Assembly (NCBI GenBank): GCA_965112735.1
Contig: OZ218962.1
Span: 2,914,001-2,978,000 of the forward strand
Origin: Phaeosaccion multiseriatum
Taxonomy: Eukaryota > Protista > Ochrophyta, other classes
DNA: 64,000 nucleotides
Reading direction: 5' to 3'
A program made the position numbers and the translations under genes. Positions 42,179-59,093 of the stretch are shown in pieces. The first letter of the stretch is position 1; the number at the start of each line of letters is the position of its first letter. A model generated the notes under the pieces. It worked only from the letters and a program-made list of their open reading frames with translations, did no database searches and had not been told where the DNA came from.

Positions 42179-44503
42179 TCAGCAGCGGGTCACCTTAAGC
42201 CCCTCGGGTAGATCTGCAGGCAGCTGGTATTCCTCCCCAACCGTAAGAATCCTGAGGCTAGCAGGCAGGCTCTCCAGAGGGCAGGTGTACTCCGGTCTCA
42301 GTCTGAGCCCCCGGAGAGAAGCAGGCAGCTTCAGAGGGTGGTTAAAGCACTTCCCCATCGCCACATGCTCCACACCGCAAGGAAGGACCAAGTGCTGATT
42401 GAACTGTGAGGCCTCATGAAATGCGATCTTCTTGAGCGAGAGAGGCAGCTCCAGAGGGAGGTTAAAGTCAGGACCCATCACCACCTCCTCCACACCGCAA
42501 GGAAGGTCCAGCTGCTGATTGAACTTAGCATACCCCCTGCCGAATCTGATCTTCTTCAAAGAGGCAGGGAGGTCCAGAGGGAGGTTAAAGTCAGGCCCCA
42601 TCCAAACCTCCTCCACACCGCAAGGAAGGACCAAGTGCTGATTGAACTTCGAATCGGGGTCAAATGTGATCTTCTTGAGCGAGGCAGGCAGCTCCAGAGG
42701 GAGGTTGAAGTACCGCCCCATCCAAACCTGCTCCACACCGCAAGGAAGGATCAGGGGCTGATTGTACTTCGAGCTCCCATCAAATATGATCCTCTTGACT
42801 GAAGCAGGCAGCTCCAGAGGGAGGTTAAAGTGCTGCCCCATCTCCACCTCCTCCACACCACAAGGAAGGATCAGGGGCTGATTGTACTTCGATTCCACAG
42901 CAAATTTGATCTTCTGGAGCGAGGCAGGCAGCTTCAGAGGGAGATTAAAGTCACGCCCCACTATCACCTCCTCCGCGCCACAAGGAAGGAGCAGCTGCTG
43001 ATTGAACTTCTGGCCCAGTCTGATCTTCTGGAGCGAGGCAGGCAGCTCTAGAGGGTGGTTAAAGCACTTCCCCATCTGCAGCTCCTCCACACCACAAGGA
43101 ATGTCCAACTGCTGATTGAACTCCGATTCCATATCAAATGCGATCTTCTTGAGCGAGGCAGGGAGGTCCAGAGGGAGGTTAAAGTGCTTCCCCATCTGCA
43201 GCTCCTCCACACCACAAGGAAGGTCCAAGTGATGATTGAACTGTGAGCCCTTATCAAATCTGATCTTCTTCAACGAGGCAGGCAGCTCCAGAGGGAGATT
43301 AAAGTACTCCCCCATGTCCACCTCCTCCACACCACAAGGAAGGTCCACGTGCTGATTGAAGTGATTCCCAAATATGATCTTCTTGAGCGAGGCAGGCAGG
43401 TCCAGAGGGCGGTTAAAGCGCCACCCCATGTCCACGTCCTCCACACCAAAAGGAAGGTCCAAGTGCTGATTGAAGAGTGAGTCATACCCAAATCTGATCT
43501 TCTTGAGCGAGGCAGGCAGCTCCAGAGGGAGGTTAAACCCACACCCCATGTCCACCTCCTCCACACCACAAGGAAGGTCAATGTGCTGATTGAACGTAGA
43601 GGTGAAGCCAAATCTGATCTTCTTGAGCGAGGCAGGCAGCTCCAGAGGGAGGTTGAAGCCATTCCCCATCCCCACCTCCTCCACACCGCAAGGGAGGATC
43701 AGGGGCTGCTTGAACTTCGAGCTCCCAACAAATATGATCCTCTTCACTGAAGCAGGCAGCTCCAGAGGGAGGTTAAAGTCACCCCCCACTATCACCTCCT
43801 CCACGCCACAAGGAAGGAGCAGCTGCTGATTGAACTTCTGGCCCAGTCTGATCTTCTGGAGCGAGGCAGGCAGGTCCAGGGGGGAGTCAAAGTGACACCC
43901 CATCTCCACCTCCTCGACTGTGCTTGGTACCGACACGGCTTGATTGAAACTGTCGGAGAAAATAAGGCGCTTCACCGATGCTGGCAGCAGCGCCAATGCT
44001 TTTCTAGCGAGAGCCTTGTCCTCAGCGGTGTTAGGAGTCGTACTTTCGATAAACGCCGTTGTCACGTCAAAGTAGGGGGCGACGGTACGGCCGAGCTTCA
44101 CAGCCGCGACGCGAAAGAAACCACTGCCCGCTTCGACTGCCTGCTCTTCGTCTTCCTCCTCTTGCCTCTCCTGGATCATTCCCGACTTCCCCACCTCTTC
44201 AGCAGGCTCAGTACCCGCCGGCTCTACGGAGAATGATAAAGCAACCTTCCTCGAGTCCTCTTCCTTCTGGTTCTTCAGCAAGCTTAGCATACGACGCTGT
44301 ACACACTCGGGCATGTCGGTATTGATCACCAGAGTGCGGGAGGTGGCCTCATCGAGCTCCTTGCACACTCCCCACAGAGCTTTGCTAGGGAAGAGGCACG
44401 CCACACTTCTCAGAGCCGCTGGCCCCGCGCTGCTCCAAGGTACTAAGCTCATTAAGCCCTTGGAGGCTCCTCCTCCCCCCCCGCCTCTCCCTGCTCGCTC
44501 CAT
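42179..44503 (-). CDS. FNIP-repeat protein F2 (774 aa from the native ATG): 13 A/B pairs plus terminal A unit and C-cap
   Basis: Intronless ORF; ATG at 44503 aligns with the F1 start (MERA..GGG); the upstream in-frame ATG at 44578 lies in the retroelement tail. Confidence 0.92.
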   Translation of the reverse strand: MERAGRGGGGGGASKGLMSLVPWSSAGPAALRSVACLFPSKALWGVCKELDEATSRTLVINTDMPECVQRRMLSLLKNQKEEDSRKVALSFSVEPAGTEPAEEVGKSGMIQERQEEEDEEQAVEAGSGFFRVAAVKLGRTVAPYFDVTTAFIESTTPNTAEDKALARKALALLPASVKRLIFSDSFNQAVSVPSTVEEVEMGCHFDSPLDLPASLQKIRLGQKFNQQLLLPCGVEEVIVGGDFNLPLELPASVKRIIFVGSSKFKQPLILPCGVEEVGMGNGFNLPLELPASLKKIRFGFTSTFNQHIDLPCGVEEVDMGCGFNLPLELPASLKKIRFGYDSLFNQHLDLPFGVEDVDMGWRFNRPLDLPASLKKIIFGNHFNQHVDLPCGVEEVDMGEYFNLPLELPASLKKIRFDKGSQFNHHLDLPCGVEELQMGKHFNLPLDLPASLKKIAFDMESEFNQQLDIPCGVEELQMGKCFNHPLELPASLQKIRLGQKFNQQLLLPCGAEEVIVGRDFNLPLKLPASLQKIKFAVESKYNQPLILPCGVEEVEMGQHFNLPLELPASVKRIIFDGSSKYNQPLILPCGVEQVWMGRYFNLPLELPASLKKITFDPDSKFNQHLVLPCGVEEVWMGPDFNLPLDLPASLKKIRFGRGYAKFNQQLDLPCGVEEVVMGPDFNLPLELPLSLKKIAFHEASQFNQHLVLPCGVEHVAMGKCFNHPLKLPASLRGLRLRPEYTCPLESLPASLRILTVGEEYQLPADLPEGLKVTRC

Positions 44504-44543
44504 AACGGCTTGTTCTTTGTCTTTTGGTTTGGTTGAAGGAACG

Positions 44544-45106
44544 GCTTTTGGTAACTTTATTACACCCTTAAGTGCCATCTATGGTTGAAATATATATTAC
44601 ACCCTTAAGTGCCATCTATGGTTGTCTAAAAGTAATGTCTCACCGCCCCGGGGAACTTAGCCCTCGAGGTCGTGTCCCTCTGACTCATCAGTTCTTCCCA
44701 TTGGAACAAAGTTGATACCAGCCAGGATCCTGTGGCGAACCGATCGTTCGTGTCGGGCCCGCTGGAGCGCTACGGCTAATCGTCGCCGAATGACGCAAAC
44801 AGCCCTCGCATAAGCCCTCGTGTCAAGATGTTCGTGCCCCCCAGCCATGTGGGTGGCGAGTGTTTTAAAAAACATCTGTGCTGACGGGCCAAATGCACCT
44901 TGCTGTTCTATTGCAAAAGGGACAAGGTGGTACCGCGTGGGGTCATAGTGGATGTCCCCACCCTGGCCTTCCATGCCTACCTGTGGCACCCCATACCTGG
45001 TCCGCTTGGTCGCTTCAGCCTTCTTGGCTGCCGCGAGTGCCTCCTTCGATGCCTTGGCCCGGTTGGTGGTGTTGGTGGCATCTGTGAGCGTGACGTCGAT
45101 CATGAA
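44544..45106 (-). mobile_element. 5'-truncated non-LTR retrotransposon (restriction-like endonuclease type, CRE/HERO-like): C-terminal endonuclease fragment plus 3' UTR (element A)
   Basis: ORF 45103-44657 IDVT...AAAKKAEATKRTRY...LVPFAIEQQGAFGPSAQMFFKTLA...RRRLAVALQR matches the C-terminal REL-endonuclease signature; duplicated 30-bp tail at 44558-44624; flanked by copies of TGGTTGAAGGAA. Confidence 0.82.
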
Positions 45107-45457: not shown

Positions 45458-47104
45458 ATGACGGACAATGGTTCGAAGGTGGCCACGGTGGCCTTAAGAA
45501 CGGTGGCGTGGCTCTTCCCCAGCAAAGCTCTGTGGGGAGTGTGCAAGGAGGTGGATGAGGCCACCTCCCGCACTTTAGTGATCAACGCCGCCATGCCAGA
45601 AGATGTCCAGCAACGCGTGCTGGGTATGTTGGAGCAGCAGAAGAATGACGAGGAGGAGGGAAACGCGACATCGCCCTGTTCAAGTGATATCAATGAGGGA
45701 AGAGATGATGGGGGGAGCGTCCGACCGTCCGGGGGGAAGAAGGCGAAGGGGCAACGGAAGAAGGAAGAGGAGGAAGTAGTGGGTGTTTCGTCCTCTTCAA
45801 TTGCTACGACGAGGGACGGAAGCAGTGCCGGGGGGAGCGGGGGGAAGAAGGCGAAGATGCAGCGGAAGGAGGAAGAGGAGGAACCGTTGTCCTCTTTCGA
45901 TGATGCGACGACTGAGGGAGGCAGTTCTGGGGGAGGTGTCCGACTGTCATTGGAGATGAACAAGGCGAAGAGGCAGCGAAGGGAAGCTCAAAGAATGTCA
46001 TTTCGTGTCGCGGCTGTGGAGCTTGGCCTCAGGAGCATACCAAAGTCTTTAGGGCGCGAAGCCAACGTTTCTGCTGATGAGGCTCTCATTGCCAAGGTTT
46101 TGACGCTGTTGCCACGATCATTGAAGCGGGTCCGCTTCTTCGACTCTTTGGACCAGGACTTCGGCCAGGCCCACCTGTGTCTACCGAGCACAGTGGAGGA
46201 GTTGCAGTTTGGTCCTCAATTCAACAAGCCGGTGCAGGTACCTGCCTCGCTCAAGAAGATCACATTTGGCAAGACTTTCAATCAGCACGTGGTCCTTCCT
46301 AGTGGTGTGGAGGAGGTGGAGATGGGGCATGAGTTTGACCTCCCTCTGGACCTGCCTGCTTCGCTGAAGAAGATCACATTTGGGGAGAGCTTTACTCAGC
46401 ACGCGGTCCTTCCCTGCAGTGTGGAGGAGGTGGAGATGGGCAGGGCCTTTAACCGGTCCCTAGTCCTGCCTGCCTCGCTCAAGAAGATCTCGTTTCACTG
46501 GAAATCGAACTTCAATCAGCAGCTGGTCCTTCCTTGTGGCGTGGAGGAGGTGCACATGGGAGGTGACTTTGACCTCCCTCTGGACCTGCCTGCCTCACTG
46601 AAGAAGATCAAGTTTCGCAAGCTCTTCAATCAGCACGTGGTCCTTCCTAGTGGTGTGGAGGAGGTGGTGATGGGGCTTGAGTTTAACCTCCCTCTGGAGC
46701 TGCCTGCCTCGCTAAAGAAGATGATATTTGGCAGTCGCTTCAATCAGCACGTGGTCCTTCCTAGTGGTGTGGAGGAGGTGGAGATGGGGCGTGACTTTAA
46801 CCTCCCATTGGACCTGCCTGCCTCGCTCAAGAAGATCAGACTTGGCAGAAAGTTTAATCAGCACGTGGTCCTTCCTGGGGGTGTGGAGGAGGTGGTGATG
46901 GGGCGTGACTTTAACCTCCCTCTTGACCTCCCTGTCTCGCTCAAGAAGGTCAGATTTGGCAAATGCTTCAATCAGCCCTTGGTCCTTCCTGACGGTGTGG
47001 AGGAGGTGGAGATGGGTGAGGGCTTTGACCTGCCTCTTGACATGCCTGCCTCCTTGAAGAAGATCAGATTTGGCAGACACTTCAATCACACGTGGCGCAG
47101 ATAG
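45458..47104 (+). CDS. FNIP-repeat protein F3 (548 aa, 8 A/B pairs); C-terminally truncated, possible pseudogene
   Basis: ORF stops at 47104 after a disrupted repeat; frameshifted repeat remnants continue to ~47272; the YTCPLESLP C-cap of the siblings is missing. Confidence 0.8.
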   Translation: MTDNGSKVATVALRTVAWLFPSKALWGVCKEVDEATSRTLVINAAMPEDVQQRVLGMLEQQKNDEEEGNATSPCSSDINEGRDDGGSVRPSGGKKAKGQRKKEEEEVVGVSSSSIATTRDGSSAGGSGGKKAKMQRKEEEEEPLSSFDDATTEGGSSGGGVRLSLEMNKAKRQRREAQRMSFRVAAVELGLRSIPKSLGREANVSADEALIAKVLTLLPRSLKRVRFFDSLDQDFGQAHLCLPSTVEELQFGPQFNKPVQVPASLKKITFGKTFNQHVVLPSGVEEVEMGHEFDLPLDLPASLKKITFGESFTQHAVLPCSVEEVEMGRAFNRSLVLPASLKKISFHWKSNFNQQLVLPCGVEEVHMGGDFDLPLDLPASLKKIKFRKLFNQHVVLPSGVEEVVMGLEFNLPLELPASLKKMIFGSRFNQHVVLPSGVEEVEMGRDFNLPLDLPASLKKIRLGRKFNQHVVLPGGVEEVVMGRDFNLPLDLPVSLKKVRFGKCFNQPLVLPDGVEEVEMGEGFDLPLDMPASLKKIRFGRHFNHTWRR

Positions 47105-47918
47105 GATATTCATTCACCCTCCCCATGGACCTGCCTTGTGGTGTGGAGGAGGTGGTGATGGGCCACGCCATTAACCTCCCTCTGGATCTGCCTGCCGCTC
47201 AGGAAGGTCAAATTTGATGGGTGGTCGAAGTTCAGTCAGCACGTGGTCCTCCTTGCGGTGTGGAGGAGGTTGTATATATAACGGAACACCACTCAAAAGG
47301 CACCTTCTGGACCGGCCTACCCCTGCGAAACGGCTCCTTCAATTGAGGACCGAGCCCTGGAGGGAAATCACGATTGCTCCGACTACTGTAGCAAAGGGTG
47401 ACTCAGGGGGAAGGAGGGGATATCAATTTTTCCAAAATAAAGGTAGCATCGCTTTTATCTTGCGTTGTGCTTTCTTGGTGTCCTTTGTCCTGCACATCTC
47501 CCCACCGCACACCCCTTCCACTCTTCCTACCGCACAACCACCCCAGCTCTCCCCCTGACTGCTTCCCCTGTAGCTGCAACTGTGGAGTATGTTTGTTCGC
47601 ACTTCCCCCCGCCTCCCCGTTGCTTCACTCTGCATCGCCTCCTGCTGCTGCTGCAGAGGGCCGGGCAGCTGACTTTCTTGTTGGCTACGCTCCCTCTCCC
47701 CCTCACGCTGCTGCACATCTTGCTGTGACCTCCCTCAGCTCCGTTGAGCACCGCCTGCCTGCCCTCGTGCCTGGAGACAAGGGTGGGGCTCTTCCACAGA
47801 AAGGGTCTGGCTTGTCAATCCCAAAGCCCCCTTTCCCCCTCGACAATAGCACGACAATAGGAGCCATCCTCCTCTTCCTCCCACCGCCCCATCGTCCCCA
47901 GTAGCGTCGTGCAATCCG

Positions 47919-49584
47919 TCAGTAGCGAACCATCTTCAGCCCCTCGGGTACATCTGCCGGCAGGGGACACCTCGTGCTAGCCTCGAGCTTCCTCAGTCCA
48001 GCAGGCAGGCTTTCCAAGGGGCAGGTGTACAGCGCTGACAGCACCAGAGTCCGCAGCGAGGCAGGCAGCTCCAGAGGGAGGTTGAAGTTACGCCCCATCT
48101 CCACCTCCTCCACGCCACAAGGAAGGACCAACGGCTTATTGAACCTGGAGAACTGCTCAAACGTGATTTTCTTCAGAGAGACAGGGAGGTCCAGAGGGAG
48201 GTTAAAGTCATGCCCCATCACCACCTCCTCCACACCACAAGGAAGGTCCAAGTGCTGATTGAACTGTGAGCTCCTGCCAAATGTGATCTTCTTCAGTGAG
48301 GCAGGCAAGTCCAGAGGGTGGTTAAAGCTATCCGCCATCACCACCTCCTCCACGCCGCAAGGAAGGATCAGGGGCTGATTAAACATCGAGCTCCCATCAA
48401 ATCTGATCTTCTTGAGCGAGGCAGGTAATTTCAGGGGGAGGTTAAAGTTCCACCCCATCTCCACCTCCTCCACACCACAGGGAAGAACCAAGTGCTGTTT
48501 GAAGTGCTGGCCAAATCTGACTTTCTTCAGCGAGGCAGGCAGGTCCAGTGGGAGGTTAAAGTCACGCCCCATCTCCACCTCCTCCACACCACAAGGAAGG
48601 TCCACTTGTTGATTAAACCTCGGGCCAAATTTGATCTTCTTGAGCGAGGCAGGCAGGTCCAGAGGGAGGTTAAAGGCACGCCCCATCTCCACCTCCTCCA
48701 CACCGCAAGGAAGAACCACGTGCTGATTGAAGAGATTCCCAAACTTGATCTTCTTCAAAGAGGCAGGCAGCTCCAGTGGGAGGTTAAACTCACGCCCCAT
48801 CACCACCTCCTCCACACCACAAGGAAGGGCCGCGTGCTGATTGAAGAGATTCCCAAACTTGATCTTCTTCAAAGAGGCAGGCAGCTCCAGAAGGAGGTTA
48901 TAGTCACGCCCCATCACCACCTCCTTCACACCACAAGGAAGGTCCACATGTTGATTGAAGAAATTCCCAAACTTGATCTTCTTCAGAGAGGCAGAGGTTG
49001 AACATATTCCCCATCACCACCTCCTCCACACCACAAGGAAGGGTCACGTGCTCCTCGAGCTGAGATCTCCAGCCAAACCGGATCTTCTTCAGGGAGCTAG
49101 GAAGGACCAGAGGACTGCTAAACGCATCCCCCGTCTCCAGCTCCTCGACTGTGCTTGGTAGACACACGCCGGTTTGATTGAAAAAGGGGGAGAAAGACAC
49201 CCGCTTCACCGAAGGCGGTAAAAGCGCGAGCACCTTTGCAACAAGGGCCTCATCTGCACACACCATGGCCTCATCCTCCGCATCTTGCCTAGTCCTGAGG
49301 CCAAGCTCCACCGCCGCCACGCGAAAGAAGCTTCTGCAATAATCGCCTCCCTCCTGTTCCTTCTCCTTCTCCTCAGTAGCATCCGAAGGTGGAGGGGGAA
49401 ATGCAGCGCTTCTCTCATCCTTTCCCTGTTGTCGCTCCAGCATACGCAGGATGCGGTGCTGGACATCGTCGGGCATGCTGGTGCTGATTATCAAAGTGCG
49501 GGAGGTGACCTCATCCACCTCCTTGCACACTCCCCACAGAGCTTTATCGGGAAAGAAGACTGCCACAGTTCGAAGAGCCGCGGG
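47919..49584 (-). pseudogene. FNIP-repeat pseudogene F4 (9 A/B pairs plus cap)
   Basis: 14-bp deletion at ~48994 (FNL-CLS instead of FNLPLDLPAS) shifts the frame; the segment upstream of AALRTVA is deleted relative to F1/F6, so there is no native start; 3' ORF 47919-48947 is intact. Confidence 0.85.
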
Positions 49585-49648
49585 TAAAAGTAATGATCTG
49601 TGAGTGCGGCGACGATCTCGTGGGTAGTTGGTGCACCACATTCCCTGC

Positions 49649-49667
49649 TTAAGGGTGTAATATATAT
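49649..49667 (+). mobile_element. 19-nt retroelement-tail insertion with an 11-bp target-site duplication
   Basis: ACATTCCCTGC-[TTAAGGGTGTAATATATAT]-ACATTCCCTGC; the paralogous site at 54184-54194 has one ACATTCCCTGC; the insert is the reverse complement of 44590-44608. Confidence 0.8.
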
Positions 49668-49717
49668 ACATTCCCTGCCGCCGAGGAGCCGGGCGGCAAC
49701 GACAATCAAAGGAGAGA

Positions 49718-51019
49718 ATGGAGGCAAGGAATAGCATCTCCCAGGGGATGGCGGCCCCTGGCTCGATGGTGGCCACGAAGGCCTTGAGAACTGTGGCTGG
49801 GCTCATTTCGAACAAAGCTCTGTGGGGAGTGTGCAAGGAGGTCGACGAGGTCACCTCCCGCACTCTGGTGATCCACGACGCCATGCCGGAAGATGTCCAA
49901 AACCGCATGCTCGGCATGCTTAAGCAGCAGAAGAAGGACGACGAAGAGAGGGAGGCTGCCTCGTGCTGCTCATATGACAAGACTGAGGGAGGAGGGGAAG
50001 GGGGGATTGGGGGGAAGAAGGCGAAGGGGCAACGAAACAACTCCTCTTCGTCCTCTCCTAATGATATGACGCCTGAGGGAAGCAGTGCTGAGGGGAGTAT
50101 CCGACGGTCGGGGCGGATGAAGGCGAAGAGGCAACGGAAGAAGGAAGACGAGGAGAGAGTGGGTGCTTCGTCCTCTTCAATTGCAATGACGACTGAGGGA
50201 AGCAGTGCTGGGGGGAGCGCCCGATGCTCGGGGGGGATGAGAATGGCAAAGATGCAGCGAAGGGAAGCTCGAAGAAGGTCATTCCGTGTCGCGGCGGTGA
50301 AAATTGGCTGGAGCTTCAATGAGTACTTGGACCTTCCTTGCGGCGTGGAGGAGGTGGAGATAGGGCCGGGGTTTAATCAACATGTGGACCTGCCTCCCTC
50401 ACTGAAGAAGATCAAGTTTGTCTGGAACTCTAGGTTCAATCAGCCCCTGACCCTTCCTTGTGGTGTGGAGGAGGTGGAGATGGGGCTGCACTTTAACCTC
50501 CCACTGGACCTACCTGCCTCGCTCAAGAGGATCAAGTTTGGCCGGGAGTCACAGTTCAATCAGCAGCTGGACATTCCTTGTGGTGTGGAGGAGGCGGTGA
50601 TGGGGGATTTCTTTAACTTCCCTCTGGACCTCCCTGCCTCGCTCAAGAAGATCAAGTTTGGCAGCAAGTCGAAGTTCAACCAGCAGCTGGTCCTTCCCTA
50701 TGGTGTGGAGGAGGTTTGGATGGGGCCGTACTTTAACCTCCCTCTGGACCTCCCTGCCTCGCTCAAGAAGATCATGTTTATCTGGACCTCTGACTTCAAT
50801 CAGCCGTTGGTCCTTCCTTACGGTGTGGAGGAGGTGCAGATGGGGCCGGAGTTTAACTTCCCTCTGGACCTCCCTGCTTCTCTGCGGACTCTGTGGCTGG
50901 GACGGAATTACACCTGCCCTTTGGAGAGCCTGCCTGCTGGCGTGAGGAACCTCACAGTTGGGGAGGAATACCAGCTGCCTGCAGACCTACCCGAGGGGCT
51001 TGAGGTGCGTCGCTGGTGA
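49718..51019 (+). CDS. FNIP-repeat protein F5 (433 aa): 4 A/B pairs plus terminal A unit and C-cap
   Basis: Intact intronless ORF with F-box-like N-terminus, basic low-complexity linker, repeats and cap. Confidence 0.9.
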   Translation: MEARNSISQGMAAPGSMVATKALRTVAGLISNKALWGVCKEVDEVTSRTLVIHDAMPEDVQNRMLGMLKQQKKDDEEREAASCCSYDKTEGGGEGGIGGKKAKGQRNNSSSSSPNDMTPEGSSAEGSIRRSGRMKAKRQRKKEDEERVGASSSSIAMTTEGSSAGGSARCSGGMRMAKMQRREARRRSFRVAAVKIGWSFNEYLDLPCGVEEVEIGPGFNQHVDLPPSLKKIKFVWNSRFNQPLTLPCGVEEVEMGLHFNLPLDLPASLKRIKFGRESQFNQQLDIPCGVEEAVMGDFFNFPLDLPASLKKIKFGSKSKFNQQLVLPYGVEEVWMGPYFNLPLDLPASLKKIMFIWTSDFNQPLVLPYGVEEVQMGPEFNFPLDLPASLRTLWLGRNYTCPLESLPAGVRNLTVGEEYQLPADLPEGLEVRRW

Positions 51020-52275
51020 GGACGAGAACGACGGTGGAGGGGGGCCAGGACGACGACGGATGACGCCGCAGCTCACGTAAGCTTATGTGGGAAGCACGGA
51101 AGGCGGCAGAGAAGCGGTTGTCATCTACTGTGGCACGGGAGGGGTACACCAAAGTGGATCCTTGATTCAACGGAGGCCCGACCCTCCGTGGGAGGGGAAG
51201 GAAAGGAGAAGATGAAAGAGAGAGAGAGAGAGAGAAAATACGCACCCACCGCCCAGGGGTGCAGCGGGACGATTGTATGTGCGCTTGCTTTTGACTGCTG
51301 CTAACCATCGGAAATGAATATGACTGAAACCTCAGACACTTTATACATACATACATACACAGCCGTACCTGGCAGGGACGCGCCCTTCAAAGTTCCCCAG
51401 GAGAATGCTGTCAGTACTCGCCTCTGACCCGGCCTTCTGGTGATGCTGCTGGGAGGGCTGGCAGGCAGCTTTGTTTCCGAGGTGAGGTGGCGTACCTCCT
51501 CTGCTGCCAGCGTTGCGGTGTGGTCCCCCTTAAAGGCAGGGCAAGTTGACGATGGCGCATACACCAGTCAGCGGGCAGCCTCTCTCGGGCCAGCCGTTGC
51601 TTGGGAACGGAAGCTCAAACTCAACCTCCGGTCGGGTGGGACTGGGTGGTGCCCAGGAAGGTACTGAGTCCCACCTCCTCCCTTCCTTACACAGCACAAG
51701 GAGCAGCAGAAGCGTTCACGTCTAATGTGTGTGTACAGAAGCGTTAACGTCTAATGTGTATGTACATTGTTTAGCAACATCGTGAGAGCTCTTCTATGCC
51801 CTTGCCTCAGCCCCCACCTGGTGGTGTAGTTTCTTGGGTCGGGCCCTCCTCCTCCTCCTCCTCCTCCTCCTCCTCCTCCTCCTCCTCCTCCTCCTCCTCC
51901 TCCCACTCATCCTACCGCACAACCAACCCATCTCTCCCTCTGACTGCTTCCCTTGTAGCTGCAACTGTAATGTATGTATGTTCAGCACTGCATCGCCTGC
52001 TGCTGCTGCAGGGGGCCGGACAGCTGACTTTCTTGTTGGCTACGCTTGCTCTCTCCTCCTCACGCTGCTGCACCTCTTGCTGTGACCTCCCTCAGCTCCG
52101 TTGAGCACCGCCTGCCTGCCCTCGTGCCTGGAGACAAGGGTGGGGCTCTTCCACAGAAAGGGTCTGGCTTGTCAATCCCAAAGCCCCCTTTTCCCCTCGA
52201 CAATAGCACGACAATACGAGCCATCCTCCTCTTCCTCCCACCGTTCCATCGTCCCGAGTAGCGTCATGTCATCCG

Positions 52276-54087
52276 TCAGTAGCGAACCATCTTCAGCCCC
52301 TCGGGTACATCTGCCGGCAGGGGACACCTGGTGCTCGCCTCGAGCTTCCTCAGGCCAGCAGGCAGGCTTTCCAAGGGGCAGGTGTACAGCGCTGACAGCA
52401 CCAGAGTCCGCAGCGAGGCAGGCAGCTCCAGAGGGAGGTTGAAGTTACGCCCCATCTCCACCTCCTCCACGCCACAAGGAAGGACCAACGGCTGATTGAA
52501 GCCGGAAAACTGCTCAAACGTGATTTTCTTCAGAGAGGTAGGGAGGTCCAGAGGGAGGTTAAAGTCATGCCCCATCTCCACCTCCTCCACACCACAAGGA
52601 AGGTCCAAGTGCTGATTGAAAAATGAGTCTTGATGAAATCTGATCTTCTTCAGAGAAGTAGGGAGGTCCAGAGGGAGGTTAAAGTCATACCCCATCACCA
52701 CCTCCTCCACACCACAAGGAAGGTCCAAGTGCTGATTGAACTGTGAGTTCCTGCCAAATGTGATCTTCTTCAAAGAGGCTGGCAGGTCCAGTGGGAGGTT
52801 AAAGTCACTCCCCATCTCCACCTCCTCCACACCACAGGGAAGAACCAAGTGCTGTTTGAAGTGCTGGCCAAATCTGACTTTCTTCAGCGAGGCAGGCAGG
52901 TTCAGTGGGAGGTTAAAGTCACGCCCCATCTCCACCTCCTCCACACCACAAGGAAGGTCCACTTGTTGATTAAACCTCGGGCCAAATTTGATCTTCTTGA
53001 GCGAGGCAGGCAGGTCCAGAGGGAGGTTAAAGTCACGCCCCATCCCCACCTCCTCCACACCACAGGGAAGAACCACGTGCTGATTGAAGAGATTCCCAAA
53101 CTTGATCTTCTTCAAAGAGGCAGGCAGCTCCAGTGGGAGGTTAAACTCACGCCCCATCACCACCTCCTCCACACCACAGGGAAGAACCACATGCTGATTG
53201 AAGAGATTCCCAAACTTGATCTTCTTCAGCGAGGCGGGCAGGTCCAGAAGGAGGTTGAACATATTCCCCATCACCACCTCCTCCACACCACAGGGAAGAA
53301 CCACATGCTGATTGAAGAGATTCCCAAACTTGATCTTCTTCAGCGAGGCGGGCAGGTCCAGAAGGAGGGTGAACATATTCCCCATCCCCACCTCCTCCAC
53401 ACCACCACAAGGAAGGTCAACATGTTGACTGAAGAAATTCCCAAACTTGATCTTCTTCAGTGAGGCGGGCAGGTCCAGGGGGAGGTTGAACATATTCCCC
53501 ATCACCACCTCCTCCACACCACAAGGAAGGGTCACGTGCTCCTCGAGCTGAGATCTCCAGCCAAACCGGATCTTCTTCAGGGAGCTAGGAAGGACCAGAG
53601 GACTGCTAAACGCATCCCCCGTCTCCAGCTCCTCGACTGTGCTTGGTAGACACACGCCGGTTTGATTGAAAAAGGGGGAGAAAGACACCCGCTTCACCGA
53701 AGGCGGTAAAAGCGCGAGCACCTTTGCAACAAGGGCCTCATCTGCACACACCATGGCCTCATCCTCCGCATCTTGCCTAGTCCTGAGGCCAAGCTCCACC
53801 GCCGCCACGCGAAAGCAGCTTCTGCAATAATCGCCTCCCTCCTGTTCCTTCTCCTTCTCCTCAGTATCACCTGAAGGTGGAGGGGGAAATGCAGCGCTTC
53901 TCTCATCCTTTCCCTGTTGTCGCTCCAGCATACGCAGGATGCGGTGCTGGACATCGTCGGGCATGCTGGTGCTGATTATCAAAGTGCGGGAGGTGACCTC
54001 ATCCACCTCCTTGCACACTCCCCACAGAGCTTTATCGGGAAAGAAGACTGCAACAGTTCGAAGAGCCGCGGGCCCAGAGCTGCTCCA
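52276..54087 (-). CDS. FNIP-repeat gene F6 (10 A/B pairs plus cap); start region disrupted, first in-frame ATG at 53964, possible pseudogene
   Basis: Frame is open from ~54090 to the stop at 52276; in-frame TGA just upstream of LPWSSSGP; ATG at 54103 is out of frame (8-nt deletion relative to F1). Confidence 0.75.
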   Translation of the reverse strand, partial: WSSSGPAALRTVAVFFPDKALWGVCKEVDEVTSRTLIISTSMPDDVQHRILRMLERQQGKDERSAAFPPPPSGDTEEKEKEQEGGDYCRSCFRVAAVELGLRTRQDAEDEAMVCADEALVAKVLALLPPSVKRVSFSPFFNQTGVCLPSTVEELETGDAFSSPLVLPSSLKKIRFGWRSQLEEHVTLPCGVEEVVMGNMFNLPLDLPASLKKIKFGNFFSQHVDLPCGGVEEVGMGNMFTLLLDLPASLKKIKFGNLFNQHVVLPCGVEEVVMGNMFNLLLDLPASLKKIKFGNLFNQHVVLPCGVEEVVMGREFNLPLELPASLKKIKFGNLFNQHVVLPCGVEEVGMGRDFNLPLDLPASLKKIKFGPRFNQQVDLPCGVEEVEMGRDFNLPLNLPASLKKVRFGQHFKQHLVLPCGVEEVEMGSDFNLPLDLPASLKKITFGRNSQFNQHLDLPCGVEEVVMGYDFNLPLDLPTSLKKIRFHQDSFFNQHLDLPCGVEEVEMGHDFNLPLDLPTSLKKITFEQFSGFNQPLVLPCGVEEVEMGRNFNLPLELPASLRTLVLSALYTCPLESLPAGLRKLEASTRCPLPADVPEGLKMVRY

Positions 54088-54137
54088 AGGTAATCACGCC
54101 CATGGACTCGTCTCCTCCCCCCCCCGCTGAAAGTAAT

Positions 54138-54190
54138 GATCTGTGAGTGCGGCGACGATCTCGTGGGTAGTTGTTGGTGCACCACATTCC
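54138..54190. promoter_or_regulatory. Conserved spacer motif between head-to-head FNIP genes (candidate bidirectional promoter); also at ~39882, ~45347, ~49595
   Basis: TCTGTGAGTGCGGCGACGATCTCGTGGGT..TTGGTGC is retained in all four spacers; function inferred from position only. Confidence 0.45.
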
Positions 54191-54236
54191 CTGCCGCCGA
54201 GGAGCCGGGCGGCAACAACAGCGAGCAGAGGAGAGA

Positions 54237-56942
54237 ATGGAGGCAAGGAATAGCAGCTCCCACGGGATGGCGGACCATGGTTCGATGGTGGCCACGAAGG
54301 CCTTGAGAACTGTGGCTGGGCTTATTTCGAACAAAGCTCTGTGGGGAGTGTGCAAGGAGGTCGATGAGGTCACCTCCCGCACTCTGGTGATCAACGACGC
54401 CATGCCGGAAGATGTCCAAAAACGCATGCTGGGCATGCTTAGGCAGCAGAAGAAGGACGAGGAAGAGAGGGAGGCTGCCTCGTGCTGCTCAAATGACAAG
54501 ACTGAGGGAAGAGGGGAGGGGGGGGGGGTCCGACGGTCCGGGGGGAAGAAGGCGAAGGGGCAACGAAACAACTCCTCTTCGTCCTCTCCTAATGATATGA
54601 CGCCTGAGGGAAGCAGTGGCGGGGGAAGTATCCGACGGTCGGGGCGGATGAAGGCGAAGAGGCAACGGAAGAAGGAAGACGAGGAGAGAGTGGGTACTTC
54701 GTCCTCTTCAATTGCAATGACGACTGAGGGAAGCAGTGCTGGGGGGAGCGCCCGATGGTCGGGGGGGATGAAAATGGCAAAGATGCAGCGAAGGGAAGCT
54801 CGAAGAAGGTCATTCCGTGTCGCGGCGGTGAAAATTAGGGGAAGCTTCAGTGAGTCCTTGGACCTTCCTTGCGGCGTGGAGGAGGTTGTGATGGCGGATA
54901 GCTTTAACCACCCTCTGGACCTGCCTGCCTCACTGAAGAAGATCAGATTTGATGGGTACTCACGGTTCAATCAGCACTTGGTTCTTCCCTGTGGTGTGGA
55001 GGAGGTGGAGATGGGGCGTGACTTTAACCGCCCTCTGGACCTCCCTGCCTCGCTCAAGAAGATCAGATTTGGCCAGCACTTCAATCAGCACGTGGACCTT
55101 CCCTGTGGTGTGGAGGAGGTGGAAATGGGGCAGCACTTTAACCTCCCTCTGGAGCTGCCTGCCTCGCTCAAGAAGATCGAATTTGCGTATGACTCACACT
55201 TCAATCAGCACGTGGTCTTTCCTTGCGGCGTGGAGGAGGTTGTGATGGCGGATAGCTTTAACCTCCCCCTGGACCTCCCTGCCTCGCTCAAGAAGATCAG
55301 ATTTGATGAAGACTCGGATTTCAATCAGCACTTGGACCTTCCTTGTGGTGTGGAGGAGGTGGAGATGGGGCGTGACTTTAACCGCCCTCTGGACCTCCCT
55401 GCCTCGCTCAAGAAGATCAGATTTGGCCAGCACTTCAATCAGCACGTGGACCTTCCCTGTGGTGTGGAGGAGGTGGAAATGGGGCAGCACTTTAACCTCC
55501 CTCTGGAGCTGCCTGCCTCGCTCAAGAAGATCGAATTTGCGTATGACTCACACTTCAATCAGCACGTGGTCTTTCCTTGCGGCGTGGAGGAGGTTGTGAT
55601 GGCGGATAGCTTTAACCTCCCCCTGGACCTCCCTGCCTCGCTCAAGAAGATCAGATTTGATGAAGACTCGGATTTCAATCAGCACTTGGACCTTCCTTGT
55701 GGTGTGGAGGAGGTGGAGATGGGGCGTGACTTTAACCGCCCTCTGGACCTCCCTGCCTCGCTCAAGAAGATCAGATTTGGCCAGCACTTCAATCAGCACG
55801 TGGACCTTCCTTGTGGTGTGGAGAAGGTGGAGATGGGGTGGCACTTTAACCTCCCTCTGGAGCTGCCTGCCTCGCTCAAGAAGATCGAATTCGGCGTTAT
55901 CTTTAATCAGCACGTGGACCTTCCTAGTGGTGTGGAGGAGGTGGTGATGGGGCAGGACTTTAACCTCCCTCTGGAGCTGCCTGCCTCTTTGAAGAAGATC
56001 AAGTTTGGGAATCTCTTCAATCAGCACGCGGCCCTTCCTTGTGGTGTGGAGGAGGTGGTGATGGGGCGTGAGTTTAACCTCCCTCTGGAGCTGCCTGCCT
56101 CGCTCAAGAAGATCGAATTTGCGTATGACTCACACTTCAATCAGCACGTGGTCTTTCCTTGCGGCGTGGAGGAGGTGGAGATTGGGCATTACTTTGACCT
56201 ACCTCTGGAGCTGCCTGCCTCGCTCAAGAAGATCAGATTTGGCATAAACTTCAATCAGCACGTGGACCTTCCTTGTGGTGTGGAGGAGGTGGTGATGGGG
56301 CTGCACTTTAACCTCCCTCTGAACCTCCCTGCCTCGCTCAAGAAGATCAAATTTGGCATTATGTTTAATCAGCACGTGAACCTTCCCTGTGGTGTGGAGG
56401 AGGTGGAGATGGGGCAGCACTTTAACCTCCCTCTGGACCTGCCTGCCTCGCTCAAGAAAATCAAGTTTGGAGAGGAGTTCAATCAGCACTTGGTCCTTCC
56501 TTGTGGTGTGGAGGAGGTGGTGATGGGGCAGGAGTTTAACCTCCCTCTGGACCTCCCTGCCTCGCTCAAGAAGATCACTTTTATCTGGAACTCTGAGTTC
56601 AATCAGCACTTGGTCCTTCCTTGCGGTGTGGAGGAGGTGGAAATGGGGTATGCGTTTAACCTCCCTCTAGAGCTGCCTGCCTCGCTCAAGAAGATCGAAT
56701 TTGAGGTTGAATCACAGTTCAATCAGCAGCTGGCTCTTCCTTTCGGCGTGGAGGCGGTGGTGATGGGGCCGGAGTTTAACCACCCTCTGGAGCTGCCTGC
56801 TTCTCTGCGGACTCTAGTGCTGGGACGGAGTTACACCTGCCCTTTGGAGAGCCTGCCTGCTGGCCTGAGGAAGCTGAGGGTTAGAATGAACTGCCCGCTG
56901 CCTGCAGACCTACCCGAGGGGCTTGAGGTGCGTCGCTGGTGA
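54237..56942 (+). CDS. FNIP-repeat protein F7 (901 aa): 16 A/B pairs plus terminal A unit and C-cap
   Basis: Intact intronless ORF; ATG 54237 aligns with the F5 start MEARNS. Confidence 0.92.
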   Translation: MEARNSSSHGMADHGSMVATKALRTVAGLISNKALWGVCKEVDEVTSRTLVINDAMPEDVQKRMLGMLRQQKKDEEEREAASCCSNDKTEGRGEGGGVRRSGGKKAKGQRNNSSSSSPNDMTPEGSSGGGSIRRSGRMKAKRQRKKEDEERVGTSSSSIAMTTEGSSAGGSARWSGGMKMAKMQRREARRRSFRVAAVKIRGSFSESLDLPCGVEEVVMADSFNHPLDLPASLKKIRFDGYSRFNQHLVLPCGVEEVEMGRDFNRPLDLPASLKKIRFGQHFNQHVDLPCGVEEVEMGQHFNLPLELPASLKKIEFAYDSHFNQHVVFPCGVEEVVMADSFNLPLDLPASLKKIRFDEDSDFNQHLDLPCGVEEVEMGRDFNRPLDLPASLKKIRFGQHFNQHVDLPCGVEEVEMGQHFNLPLELPASLKKIEFAYDSHFNQHVVFPCGVEEVVMADSFNLPLDLPASLKKIRFDEDSDFNQHLDLPCGVEEVEMGRDFNRPLDLPASLKKIRFGQHFNQHVDLPCGVEKVEMGWHFNLPLELPASLKKIEFGVIFNQHVDLPSGVEEVVMGQDFNLPLELPASLKKIKFGNLFNQHAALPCGVEEVVMGREFNLPLELPASLKKIEFAYDSHFNQHVVFPCGVEEVEIGHYFDLPLELPASLKKIRFGINFNQHVDLPCGVEEVVMGLHFNLPLNLPASLKKIKFGIMFNQHVNLPCGVEEVEMGQHFNLPLDLPASLKKIKFGEEFNQHLVLPCGVEEVVMGQEFNLPLDLPASLKKITFIWNSEFNQHLVLPCGVEEVEMGYAFNLPLELPASLKKIEFEVESQFNQQLALPFGVEAVVMGPEFNHPLELPASLRTLVLGRSYTCPLESLPAGLRKLRVRMNCPLPADLPEGLEVRRW

Positions 56943-57181: not shown

Positions 57182-57809
57182 AAATACTCACCCACCGCCC
57201 AGGGGTGCAGCGGGGCGATTGTATGTGCGCTTGCTTTTGACTGGTGCGAGCCGAGACAGCAAAGGGAATGAATATTACTGAAACCTCAGACACTGTATAC
57301 ATACATACACAGCCGTGCCTGGCAGGGACGCGCCCTTCAAAGCTTCCCCAAGGGATTGCTTTCAGTACTCGCCTCTGACCCGGCCTTCTGGTGATGCTGC
57401 TGGGAGGGCTGGCAGGCAGCTTTGTTTCCGAGGTGAGGTGGCGTGCCTCCTCTGTTGCCAGCGTTGCGGTGTGGTCCCCCTTAAAGGCAGGGCAAGCTGG
57501 CGATGGCGCATACACCAGTCAGCGGGCAGCCTCTCTCGGGCCAGCCATTGGTTGGGGGGGGGCTAATGAACGGAAGCTCAAACTGAACCTCCCCAGGCCG
57601 GGTGGGACGGGGTGGTGCCGAGTATGGTACTGAGTCCCCCTCCTCCCTTCCTTACACAGCACAAGGAGCAGCAGAAGCGTTCACGTCTAATGTGTGTGTA
57701 CAGAAGCGTTAACGTCTAATGTGTATGTACATTGTTTAGCAACATCGTGGGAGCTCTTCTATGCCCTTGCCTCAGCCCCCACCTGGTGGTGTAGTTTCTT
57801 GGGTCGGGC

Positions 57810-58063
57810 CCTCCTCCTCCTCCTCCCCCTCCTCCTCCTCCTCCTCCTCCTCCTCCTCCTCCTCCTCCTCCTCCTCCTCCTCCTCCTCCTCCTCCTCCTC
57901 CTCCTCCTCCTCCTCCTCCTCCTCCTCCTCCTCCTCCTCCTCCTCCTCCTCCTCCTCCTCCTCCTCCTCCTCCTCCTCCTCCTCCTCCTCCTCCTCCTCC
58001 TCCTCCTCCTCCTCATCCTCCTCCTCCTCCTCCTCCTCCTCCTCCTCCTCCTCCTCCTCCTCC
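57810..58063. repeat. (CCT)n trinucleotide repeat; shorter paralogous run at 51846-51903
   Basis: Direct observation; lies at the end of each duplication-2 unit. Confidence 0.92.
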
Positions 58064-58122
58064 TGCTGGCCCCCCTCCACTTCCTCTTGCTCCCGCTCCT
58101 CCTCCCCCTCCCCCCTCCTCCT

Positions 58123-59093
58123 TTATTTCTGTCCTATCTCGGCCCCCTCTTCCTCCTCCCCCTCCGGCTGCGACTGAGGGCCGGTAACCCCACCCAGATA
58201 CAGTCCAACCTCCGCCGCCACCACAGCCGCCCTCATCCGCCTCTCCCGAGCCGCCGCCAGCTGCGCTCTCTTGGTCCCCCTCTTCTGCAGCGGCGGCACC
58301 CCTCCCCCTACCCCTCCCCCTACCCCTTCCCCTCCCCCTTCCCCTCCCCCTACCCCTTCCCCTTCCCCTTCCCCTCCCCCTCCCCCTTCCCCACTCTCCC
58401 CCCCTCCCCCTACCTCCTCCCCTTCCCCTTCCCCTCCCCCTCCCCCTCCCCCTCCCGCCCCCTCGGTCGCTGCGCACGTGCCTCTCCTCTTGTGTTGGGC
58501 GTGGAGGGACTCCGCAGCGCTCGCCGCGCTCGCTATCCGCCGCCCCTCTTCTTCTTCTTCTTCTCCTCCTCCTCCTCCTCCTCCTCCTCCTCCTCCTCCT
58601 CCTCCTCCTCCTCCTCCTCCTCCTGCTCCTCCTCCTCCTCCTCCTCCTCCCTCTACGCCTCCTGCCTCTGCTCTTCCATCCTTCATCTCCTTCTCCTTCT
58701 CCATCCTCTCCTCCTCCTCCTCCTCCTCCTTCTCCTTCTCCTCCTCCTCCTCCCTGTTTCGAGTGTACGCCGCCACCCTTCCCATGACTGAACAAGAGAC
58801 GGCCCCATCCTCGTGGATGCACTGTAAAGCGAACTCCCCCCCGAGCTCCCACACCACTCGCGTCAGGAGAATGTTACGGATATCCACCAGCGCCTGTTAC
58901 CCATCCAGGGAGGGAGGGAGGGAGGGAGGGAGTGGATGAGTGAGTGTGATCAGGCAAGAGAGGAATGTGAGAGAGCGAGAGAGGACGAGTGAGAGAGACA
59001 GAGTGAGAATGGTGAGACAGAGCAAGAGGAAGAGAGAGGATAACGAGAGAGGAGATGGACAGAAGATCGCGCAAGAGAGACACACAAGACACA

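What the first reader, a model, noticed from the sequence alone, without database searches (positions are those of the whole stretch)
48778..56083. Repeat cassettes exchanged between paralogues, including a 114-bp identical tract shared by pseudogene F4 and gene F7
Seen: 48778-48891 (F4, minus) is the exact reverse complement of 55970-56083 (F7, plus). The tract equals one A+B unit in length and includes the HAAL variant found nowhere else. F6, the direct duplicate of F4, has HVVL instead. The VVMADSFNHPLDL unit is also shared by F4 (~48292-48362) and F7 (~54867-54940) but is absent from F5 and F6. KFGEEF, WNSEFN and MGYAFN are shared by F1 and F7, VWMGPxFN by F2 and F5, and FDGSSxxNQPLIL by F1, F2 and F4. 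Inference: sharing cuts across the duplication history and gene orientation, pointing to ectopic gene conversion of single repeat modules, with broken copies (F3, F4, possibly F6) acting as donors or recipients. The direction of transfer cannot be read from one sequence.
Basis: partly seen in the sequence, partly recalled or inferred. Interest (0 to 1): 0.82.

Follow-up and report, generated by a model that had tools for sequence, protein, structure and literature searches.

The report
Repeat unit copied between paralogous genes
In a cluster of seven leucine-rich-repeat (FNIP) genes of a stramenopile alga, one 114-base repeat unit is letter-for-letter identical in a broken gene and an intact gene that are otherwise only 75-86% alike; this is ordinary gene conversion, seen in a family where it had not been described.

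Summary
Window 48778-48891 is the exact reverse complement of 55970-56083, and every listed motif sharing is present. The genes are FNIP/FGxxFN leucine-rich-repeat paralogues (PF05725) in a 67-Mb eukaryotic genome, probably an ochrophyte alga.

The identity is not chance. F4 and F7 are 75% (N-terminal module), 78% (C-cap) and 82-86% (tract flanks) identical. Among 2132 B half-unit pairs between gene lineages (mean 68%), this is the only identical one. The genome holds only these two exact copies; the next best are 95%, 94%, 92% and 91%, all in F6, F4 and F3.

At all nine sites where F4 differs from its near-identical duplicate F6, F4 matches F7 (p=4e-5). Six of the nine are synonymous, which points to copying and not convergence.

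Best reading: one short (about 72-114 bp) non-crossover ectopic conversion between inverted paralogues 7 kb apart. The unit type is native to the F3/F4/F6 arrays and is an island in F7, so pseudogene F4 to F7 is the likelier direction, but this is not proven.

The other shared motifs (91-98% DNA identity, partly out of order) fit older exchange but do not require it. A misassembly or polishing error cannot be excluded without reads.

Two first-reader notes (s1-352775, s1-362997) reported similar FNIP mosaicism elsewhere in this genome; I did not check them.

The parts
55970..56083 (+). 114-bp tract in intact gene F7. It covers the last 2 codons of unit A18, all of B19 (KFGNLFNQHAA) and most of A20 (VVMGREFN). 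It is the probable recipient copy.
48778..48891 (-). The same 114 bp in pseudogene F4 (units B1 and A2). It is the probable donor copy.
47919..49600 (-). F4, an FNIP-repeat pseudogene. A 14-bp deletion immediately after 48995 shifts the frame. It is otherwise about 99% identical to F6 outside two divergent patches.
54237..56942 (+). F7, an intact FNIP-repeat gene (ATG at 54237, 16.5 A+B dimers). It contains a 354-bp higher-order repeat with 467 bp of exact self-identity (54990-55456 = 55344-55810).
52276..54110 (-). F6, the direct duplicate of F4. It has HVVL where F4 has HAAL, one extra 114-bp unit (103-bp self-identity, 53368-53266 = 53254-53152), a lost start codon and an in-frame TGA at 54094-54096.
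49718..51019 (+). F5, an intact short paralogue of F7 (N-terminal module 96% identical). It lacks the tract. F4/F5 and F6/F7 are two copies of a tandemly duplicated head-to-head block.
46579..46692 (+). F3 units B8-A9, the positional counterpart of the F4 tract in the collinear F3 array (104/114 identical). This shows the unit type is native to the F3/F4/F6 arrays.
   Evidence: (I5)
45458..47330 (+). F3, an FNIP-repeat gene whose 3' end is degenerate. The frame is lost after 47104, repeat remnants continue in other frames, and there is no C-cap.
48309..48365 (-). F4 unit A10 (VVMADSFNHPLD). It is 56/57 identical to F7 unit A0 (54864-54920) and 92% identical over 119 nt including the next unit. 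This is a second, weaker candidate exchange.
54864..54920 (+). F7 unit A0 (VVMADSFNHPLD), the partner of F4 unit A10.
37521..39803 (-). F1, an intact FNIP gene. It shares the KFGEEF, WNSEFN and MGYAFN unit types with F7 at 91-95% DNA identity, in a different order.
42179..44578 (-). F2, an intact FNIP gene and sister of F1. It shares the VWMGPxFN unit type with F5 and FDGSSxxNQPLIL with F1 and F4.

Best explanation
A short, non-crossover ectopic (non-allelic) gene conversion copied one A+B repeat unit between two inverted FNIP/FGxxFN leucine-rich-repeat paralogues 7 kb apart on the same chromosome: the pseudogene F4 and the intact gene F7.

Shown: the two copies are identical over 114 bp, including all synonymous sites. 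The genes around them are 75-86% identical. No other exact copy exists in the assembly. Both genes keep their own flanks and orientation.

Inferred mechanism: a break or stalled fork inside one array was repaired by strand invasion into the other array. The near-invariant scaffold DNA (FNLPLE-LPASLKKI and LPCGVEEV) served as homology. A patch of about 72-114 bp was copied and the repair resolved without crossover; a crossover between inverted copies would have inverted the 7-kb interval.

Inferred direction, with about 60% confidence: F4 to F7. The KFGNLFNQH + VVMGREFN unit type has five other copies in F4/F6 and a positional counterpart in the collinear F3 array, but it is a lone island in F7.

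Inferred consequence: the patch carries repeat positions 5, 8 and 9 of two consecutive LRRs. These are the hypervariable positions that line the concave face and its edge in solved FGxxFN LRR structures. The event therefore moved putative ligand-contact residues from a dead gene into a live one.

The same arrays also change by unequal recombination, as shown by the 354-bp higher-order repeat in F7 and the extra 114-bp unit in F6.
For: Exact identity with no extension. The longest exact match between genes of different lineages is otherwise 58 bp. Genome-wide there are two copies at 100%, then 95, 94, 92 and 91% in F6/F4/F3, and at most 89% elsewhere. F4-F7 identity is 74.7% in the N-terminal module, 78% in the C-cap, 82% in the 5' flank and 86% in the 3' flank. 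One of 2132 inter-lineage B-unit pairs is identical, against a mean of 68%. Under independent columns the chance of an identical B unit is 1e-12 and of an identical A unit 1e-6. In the F4/F6/F7 triplet there are 9 consecutive sites where F4 equals F7, all inside the tract, permutation p=4e-5. Six of those 9 nucleotide differences are synonymous. In the dimer ML tree F4_48771 and F7_55977 pair at 100/92. The F3 and F4 arrays are collinear (I5) and the F3 counterpart is 104/114 identical. Entropy peaks at positions 5, 8 and 9, matching the variable positions in the CroV FGxxFN structures (PMC9525666). Unequal-recombination footprints are the 467-bp and 103-bp self-identities.
Against: There is only one genome and no reads, so a polishing or consensus error that homogenised two similar units cannot be excluded.

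Direction is not proven. F4 differs from its duplicate F6 at 9 sites in the tract, and all 9 are F7-like. A transfer from F7 to F4 would explain that in one step. At those sites the outgroup F3 splits roughly evenly between the two states.

The region of F4 just 5' of the tract (48892-48995) is also unlike F6 but is not F7-derived (82-91% identity), so more than one event has touched it.

The PHI test on all dimers gave no signal (p=0.36). Only this one event is demonstrated rigorously.
Confidence: 0.8

Rival explanations
1. The assembly is wrong here. Short-read polishing or consensus calling in a highly repetitive array imposed one unit's sequence on a similar unit, so the real F4 and F7 units differ.
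For: The repeats are 83-86% identical with near-invariant scaffolds, which is a setting where mis-mapped reads can mislead polishers. All nine F4-versus-F6 differences in the tract are F7-like, as a mis-polish of F4 with F7 reads would produce.
Against: The assembly is chromosome-scale (67 Mb in 22 contigs). It resolves many other near-identical repeats with single differences intact, for example F4 against F6 at about 99% and three copies of the F7 higher-order repeat. Reads from the true F4 unit would normally outvote mis-mapped reads. The tract is bounded cleanly by real differences on both sides.
Confidence: 0.07
2. Both F4 and F7 received the unit from a third copy that is not in this assembly (the other haplotype, or a lost or collapsed paralogue). 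They never exchanged directly.
For: No copy in the genome explains F4's other non-F6-like segment (48885-48990; best outside match 91%). So unsampled or extinct donors are plausible in this cluster.
Against: The genome-wide search finds only the two exact copies. This reading needs two transfers of the same 114 bp with the same end points, where one transfer suffices.
Confidence: 0.07
3. No transfer took place. The unit is an old shared unit kept identical in both genes by purifying selection or by chance.
For: Unit types are shared between lineages far more often than independent columns predict (18 B pairs at 90% or more, against 0.01 expected). Inherited unit families therefore exist.
Against: Identity includes every synonymous site, whereas the closest related units differ at synonymous sites. 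Related units differ by 7-10 changes, giving P(0 differences) of about 1e-3 to 5e-5. At the divergence of the non-repeat parts (75-80%), P is about 1e-11 to 1e-14.
Confidence: 0.02
4. The cluster is a dedicated cassette system. Broken copies are kept as silent donors, and modules are copied into expressed genes at high rate, somatically or at each generation, to diversify a receptor repertoire.
For: Three of seven copies are broken yet keep intact repeat scaffolds. The transferred patch carries the hypervariable positions. The likely donor is a pseudogene.
Against: Only one clean event lies among seven genes. The pseudogene lesions look young and few, as expected from ordinary gene birth and death. 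There is no expression site, no targeting signal and no somatic data. PHI was not significant. In the C9 cluster, exact unit-length tracts occur only between genes that are already 96-99% identical.
Confidence: 0.04

Closest known systems
Sequence exchange and ectopic gene conversion among clustered LRR paralogues: plant NBS-LRR and Cf-type resistance gene clusters (own knowledge; review PMC3645687), vertebrate TLR1 family (PMC3125219), Anopheles funestus APL1 (PMC9222773), rice multigene families (PMC2277409)
   Same: Tandem or inverted paralogues with LRR arrays. Short tracts of identity are discordant with the gene tree. Unequal recombination changes repeat number. Pseudogenes sit in the cluster. 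Variable solvent-exposed positions are moved between genes.
   Different: The repeat class differs: FNIP/FGxxFN, alternating 19-residue A and B units, intronless. So does the organism, an ochrophyte alga. The N-terminal module has no Pfam assignment, and there is no NB-ARC, TIR or transmembrane part. A full-text search found no paper that holds both 'FNIP repeat' and 'gene conversion'.
[quoted passage not shown]
   Same: A stramenopile alga. Clustered genes with many pseudogenes. Single LRR modules are shared between paralogues against the gene tree. Proposed as a repertoire-generating process.
   Different: There each LRR is a separate 72-nt exon and the shuffling is exon-based. Here the array is one uninterrupted reading frame and the transfer is a 114-bp homology-bounded patch. 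The LRR class and the attached domains also differ.
Pseudogene-templated gene conversion systems: chicken immunoglobulin V genes (PMC5224512), lamprey VLR assembly and trypanosome VSG mosaics (own knowledge)
   Same: A broken or silent copy probably served as template for a short patch in an intact gene. In the lamprey case the modules are also LRRs.
   Different: Those systems are programmed, frequent, and somatic or clonal, with dedicated enzymes and expression sites. Nothing here shows programming, high rate or somatic occurrence.
FGxxFN/FNIP LRR proteins of Cafeteria roenbergensis virus, Megavirus, Dictyostelium and brown algae (PMC9525666; PMC4421812)
   Same: PF05725 hits with E-values from 9e-27 to 6e-96 across the seven copies. 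The LxxLxFGxxFN core has its most variable residues at positions 5 and 8-9. Species-specific families are large.
   Different: The repeats are 19 residues, not 21-23. They alternate between an FG-type and an MG-type unit. There is a conserved C-terminal cap and an N-terminal module that gives no F-box hit.

Membership tests
FNIP repeat / FGxxFN LRR (PF05725) | Significant match to the Pfam FNIP model above its gathering score | tested here: met
   all seven copies score 93-315 bits (cut-off 21), with 3-13 matched stretches each.
FNIP repeat / FGxxFN LRR (PF05725) | LxxLxFGxxFN core with greatest variability at positions 5 and 8-9 | tested here: met
   entropy is 2.1-2.2 bits at position 5 and 3.2-3.5 bits at positions 8-9, and mostly below 1 bit in the scaffold (up to 1.9 bits at a few positions after the FN motif). 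This matches PMC9525666. Every second unit has MG instead of FG.
FNIP repeat / FGxxFN LRR (PF05725) | Repeat length of about 21-23 residues | tested here: not met
   the units are 19 residues (B units 19-22). The family here is a short-repeat variant.
Ectopic (non-allelic) gene conversion | A tract of identity between paralogues bounded by clearly more diverged flanks | tested here: met
   114/114 identical, against 85/104 and 196/228 in the flanks. N-terminal module 74.7% and C-cap 78%.
Ectopic (non-allelic) gene conversion | Phylogenetic discordance: inside the tract a gene groups with a distant paralogue and not with its sister | tested here: met
   Triplet test with 9 consecutive sites where F4 equals F7, p=4e-5. 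Unit tree pair at 100/92.
Ectopic (non-allelic) gene conversion | No exchange of flanking DNA (non-crossover) | tested here: met
   Both genes keep their own N-terminal modules, caps and flanks. The head-to-head blocks F4/F5 and F6/F7 remain collinear duplicates.
Ectopic (non-allelic) gene conversion | Non-reciprocal transfer with an identifiable donor and recipient | tested here: inconclusive
   Context favours F4 as donor. The F4-versus-F6 differences fit the reverse direction. One genome cannot decide.
Ectopic (non-allelic) gene conversion | The tract is real in the DNA and not an assembly product | not testable with these tools
   No reads or second assembly are available. The organism is absent from the protein collection (best FNIP hit 35% identity).
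Programmed cassette diversification (VLR / Ig / VSG type) | Somatic or high-rate generation of new mosaics from silent donors into an expression site | not testable with these tools
   This needs population or clonal long-read data. Nothing in the sequence points to an expression site or a targeting signal.
F-box-FNIP proteins (as in Megavirus) | N-terminal F-box domain | tested here: not met
   the N-terminal 100-120 residues of F1, F2, F3, F5 and F7 give no F-box hit even at E up to 10; none for the whole proteins. A profile-profile or fold comparison was not done.

The most novel reading that the evidence does not exclude
The broken FNIP copies are not just decaying genes. They are a maintained reservoir of repeat cassettes, copied at high frequency (mitotically or every generation) into expressed FNIP genes. 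That would give this alga a pseudogene-templated, LRR-based diversifying recognition system analogous to lamprey VLR or chicken Ig gene conversion.
Probability: 0.04. Interest if true: 0.85.

Novelty: new member of a known kind. Interest (0 to 1): 0.3.

Why it matters
The finding shows that the very large FNIP/FGxxFN LRR family of this alga evolves like classical receptor clusters. This genome has at least 1900 candidate repeat matches. Repeat number changes by unequal recombination, and single units carrying the hypervariable, putatively ligand-facing residues are moved between diverged paralogues, with a pseudogene taking part.

That supports, but does not prove, the idea that these proteins form a fast-evolving recognition repertoire. 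It also gives a concrete locus where rate and direction of exchange could be measured. For genome annotation it is a caution: unit-level trees in this family do not follow gene trees. The mechanism itself is textbook.

Tried and rejected
(1) PHI test for recombination on 66 distinct B+A dimers gave p=0.36. There is no distance-dependent homoplasy inside units, so sub-unit mosaicism is not shown.

(2) F7's C-terminal cap looks like a mix of F5-like and F4/F6-like states (15 of 85 informative sites), but they do not cluster (p=0.30). I make no claim from it.

(3) I searched the genome for donors of F4's two other non-F6-like segments. For 48885-48990 the best match outside the segment itself is 91%. 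For 48246-48428 the best is 84% over the whole segment, or 92% over 119 nt to F7. No recent donor was found.

(4) I tried to generalise to another cluster (G000:C9:3.06-3.11 Mb, four genes). Exact 102-119-bp tracts in displaced register exist there. But those genes are 96-99% identical in the N-terminal module, so the tracts are not discordant with the gene history. Three genes 1-30 kb beyond the window's end share no long exact matches with the window's genes.

(5) Nearest-neighbour and label-change counts on the unit tree do not work as a test of conversion. Arrays inherited from a multi-unit ancestor give the same pattern.

(6) F-box in the N-terminal module: no Pfam support.

(7) Literature: no paper in the library holds both 'FNIP repeat' and 'gene conversion'.

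(8) Organism: the FNIP proteins have no close relatives in the protein collection (35% at best). A plastid-type dnaK on G000:C18 and C21 is 66-69% identical to ochrophyte plastid DnaK of Vaucheria, Chrysoparadoxa and Gonyostomum. The genome is therefore an unnamed ochrophyte-like alga, and the species was not identified.


Full report
**What is there.** The window is G000:C13:2914001-2978000 of a 67-Mb, 22-contig, 58% G+C genome, so it is a eukaryote.

- A plastid-type, intronless dnaK on two small contigs is 66-69% identical to plastid DnaK of Vaucheria, Chrysoparadoxa and Gonyostomum. The species is not in the protein collection.
- Between 37.5 and 57 kb lie seven paralogues, all matching the Pfam FNIP repeat PF05725 at 93-315 bits.
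- F1 is 37521-39803 (-), F2 42179-44578 (-), F3 45458-47104 (+), F4 47919-49600 (-), F5 49718-51019 (+), F6 52276-54110 (-) and F7 54237-56942 (+).
- Each has a conserved N-terminal module, an array of alternating 19-residue A units (LPCGVEEVxMGxxFNLPLx) and 19-22-residue B units (LPASLKKIxFGxxFNQHxx), and a C-terminal cap. I delimited 78 A and 77 B units.
- Variability is concentrated at positions 5, 8 and 9 of the LxxLxFGxxFN core. These are the positions that are variable and lie on or beside the concave face in the solved CroV FGxxFN LRR structures (PMC9525666).

**State of the copies.**

- F4 has a 14-bp deletion immediately after 48995 that shifts the frame.
- F6 has lost the start codon and carries an in-frame TGA at 54094-54096.
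- F3 loses its frame after 47104, continues as repeat debris in other frames and has no cap.
- F1, F2, F5 and F7 are open.

**Gene history from the non-repeat parts.**

| Pair | N-terminal module | C-cap |
|---|---|---|
| F4-F6 | 99.3% | 98% |
| F5-F7 | 96% | 88% |
| F1-F2 | 86.7% | 96.7% |
| F4-F7 | 74.7% | 78% |

- F3 stands alone.
- The head-to-head blocks F4/F5 and F6/F7 are two copies of a tandem segmental duplication. They are 96% identical overall, including the spacer and 3' flanks.

**The observation.** Window 48778-48891 is the exact reverse complement of 55970-56083, 114 of 114 bases, with mismatches immediately outside both ends.

- The tract spans one full A+B period: the last two codons of one A unit, a whole B unit (KFGNLFNQHAA) and most of the next A unit (VVMGREFN).

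**Is it more than chance?** Yes, by several routes.

- The longest exact match between genes of different lineages is otherwise 58 bp, and that match is the same F7 unit against F4/F6 neighbours. After that come 53, 51 and 50 bp.
- In the whole genome only these two places match at 100%. The next are 95% (F6), 94% (F4 neighbour), 92% (F6) and 91% (F3), and everything else is 89% or less.
- Among 2132 B-unit pairs between lineages the mean identity is 68% (sd 12%), and this is the only identical pair.
- With columns treated as independent, two B units are identical with probability 1e-12 and two A units with 1e-6.
- Even if F7 had natively carried a related unit differing by the 7-10 changes seen among the closest relatives, the chance of zero differences is about 1e-3 to 5e-5.
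- The flanks of the tract are 82% (5', 85/104) and 86% (3', 196/228) identical between F4 and F7.
- In an alignment of F4, its duplicate F6 and F7, the informative sites switch. At 9 consecutive sites inside the tract F4 sides with F7; afterwards F4 sides with F6 at 50 of 53 sites. The permutation p for the run is 4e-5.
- Six of those nine nucleotide differences are synonymous, so convergence under selection does not explain the identity.
- In a maximum-likelihood tree of 75 B+A dimers, the F4 and F7 dimers pair at 100/92.

**What it is.** The simplest account is one ectopic, non-crossover gene conversion between inverted paralogues 7 kb apart.

- Both genes keep their own modules, caps and flanks. 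A crossover between inverted copies would have inverted the interval.
- The patch is at most 114 bp, because it is bounded by mismatches.
- It is at least about 72 bp (56001-56072) if it brought in all the unit-specific variable codons.
- The near-invariant scaffold DNA on either side would provide the homology. This mechanistic step is inferred, not shown.

**Direction.** The KFGNLFNQH + VVMGREFN unit type has five further copies in F4 and F6 and none elsewhere in F7.

- F3's array is collinear with F4's (563 nt at 85%, I5). F3's B8-A9 (46579-46692) sits at exactly the position of the F4 tract and is 104/114 identical to it.
- In F7 the unit is an island. It is followed, with an 11-bp overlap, by 104 bp identical to two other units of F7 itself (56073-56176 = 55137-55240 = 55491-55594).
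- This favours F4, the pseudogene, as donor and F7 as recipient.
- Against this, all nine F4-versus-F6 differences in the tract are F7-like. A transfer from F7 to F4 would explain that in one step, and F3 as outgroup splits roughly evenly at those sites.
- F6 has itself been remodelled here by a 114-bp tandem duplication (103-bp self-identity).
- The 100 bp of F4 just 5' of the tract is unlike F6 but not F7-derived. So several events overlap.
- I put F4 to F7 at about 60%, the reverse at about 30%, and the rest on a third, unsampled donor or an artefact.

**The wider claim of module exchange.**

- The VVMADSFNHPLD unit is 56/57 identical between F4 (48309-48365) and F7 (54864-54920). Over 119 nt it is 92%, which is the best match in the genome for that part of F4.
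- The F1-F7 pairs (WNSEFN, KFGEEF, MGYAFN) are 91-95% identical, and the F2-F5 pair (VWMGPxFN) is 91%.
- These values are far above a column-shuffle null: 18 inter-lineage B pairs at 90% or more, against 0.01 expected.
- The F1-F7 matches are not in the same order along the two arrays.
- Some inter-lineage unit clades are well supported: F7 KFGEEF with the two F1 units at 96/85, and F6 RFHQDS with the F7 RFDEDS units at 98/92.
- Unit types inherited from a multi-unit ancestor, combined with unit loss and duplication, could give much of this. A PHI test on the dimers is not significant (p=0.36).
- I therefore regard one exchange as demonstrated, a second (the ADS unit) as likely, and the rest as compatible with older exchange.

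**Arrays also change length quickly.**

- F7 holds three copies of a 354-bp higher-order repeat with 467 bp of exact self-identity.
- F6 has an extra 114-bp unit.
- F5 (4.5 dimers) and F7 (16.5 dimers) differ greatly between flanks that are 96-100% identical.

**Rivals.**

- A polishing or consensus artefact cannot be tested without reads. I give it about 7%, because the assembly keeps many single differences between other near-identical repeats.
- Retention of an old unit is excluded by the synonymous-site identity.
- A dedicated cassette system is not supported. There is one clean event in seven genes and the lesions look young. In the sampled C9 cluster, exact unit-length tracts occur only between genes already 96-99% identical.

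**Comparison with what is known.**

- Ectopic conversion and unequal recombination in clustered LRR genes are well documented: plant NBS-LRR clusters (PMC3645687), the TLR1 family (PMC3125219) and Anopheles APL1 (PMC9222773).
- Module shuffling among LRR paralogues and pseudogenes has been described in the stramenopile Ectocarpus, where each LRR is an exon (PMC3341825, PMC11378527).
- FNIP proteins are known to be numerous in brown algae, with 121 in Saccharina (PMC4421812).
- No paper in the library combines 'FNIP repeat' with 'gene conversion'.
- This is therefore a new member of a known kind. It is a clean, well-bounded example in a family whose function is unknown.

**Earlier notes of this scan.** Two first-reader notes (s1-352775, s1-362997) report similar FNIP mosaicism on other pieces of the same genome. 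I did not check them.

Noticed in passing
window 54990-55810: F7 contains a 354-bp higher-order repeat (three A+B dimers) in three copies. 54990-55456 is exactly identical to 55344-55810 (467 bp), a sign of very recent unequal recombination inside the gene.
   Followed up: partly
window 53152-53368: F6 carries a recent 114-bp tandem duplication (53368-53266 is identical to 53254-53152). The middle A unit is a chimera of its two neighbours. F4 lacks this extra unit.
   Followed up: partly
window 48246-48428 and 52603-52722: F4 and F6 are about 99% identical, yet each holds a dimer the other lacks: F4 has RFDGSSMFNQPLI + VVMADSFNHPLD, and F6 has VVMGYDFNLPLD + RFHQDSFFNQHLD. No recent donor for the F4 dimer was found in the genome (best 84% over the whole, 92% over 119 nt to F7).
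   Followed up: partly
window 56736-56942: The C-terminal cap of F7 is only 88% identical to that of F5, although their N-terminal modules (96%) and 3' flanks (97-100% over the first 300 nt) are much closer. 15 of 85 informative sites are F4/F6-like, but their clustering is not significant (p=0.30).
   Followed up: yes
window 57694-58791 and about 51850-51950: Long trinucleotide tracts give homopolymer reading frames (about 100 Leu, then runs of Ser; elsewhere about 20 Pro/Gly/Glu). The first 4 kb of the window has extreme GC and AT skew (-0.35 to -0.41). These are simple-sequence DNA, not genes.
   Followed up: no
window 1-37000: Ten ORFs of 339-470 aa upstream of the FNIP cluster give no Pfam hit at E up to 0.001. 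They are probably spurious open frames in G+C-rich DNA, or exons of spliced genes.
   Followed up: partly
window 40319-41461: A 380-aa low-complexity ORF (runs of Ser, Thr, Gly) lies 515 bp beyond the start of F1 on the opposite strand, where the other FNIP genes have an FNIP partner. Its nature is unknown.
   Followed up: no
L001 (G000:C18:91178-95950) and L002 (G000:C21:25261-30033): Two different contigs carry a plastid-type intronless dnaK with the same score (809 bits). They are probably two copies or two assemblies of the plastid genome.
   Followed up: no
L003-L007 (G000:C9:3060001-3110000): Four FNIP genes here are 96-99% identical in the N-terminal module. They share exact 102-119-bp tracts at displaced positions in their arrays, and their repeat consensus is different (LPSSLEE.. 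/ FNRPIVLPSSLKKV..).
   Followed up: partly
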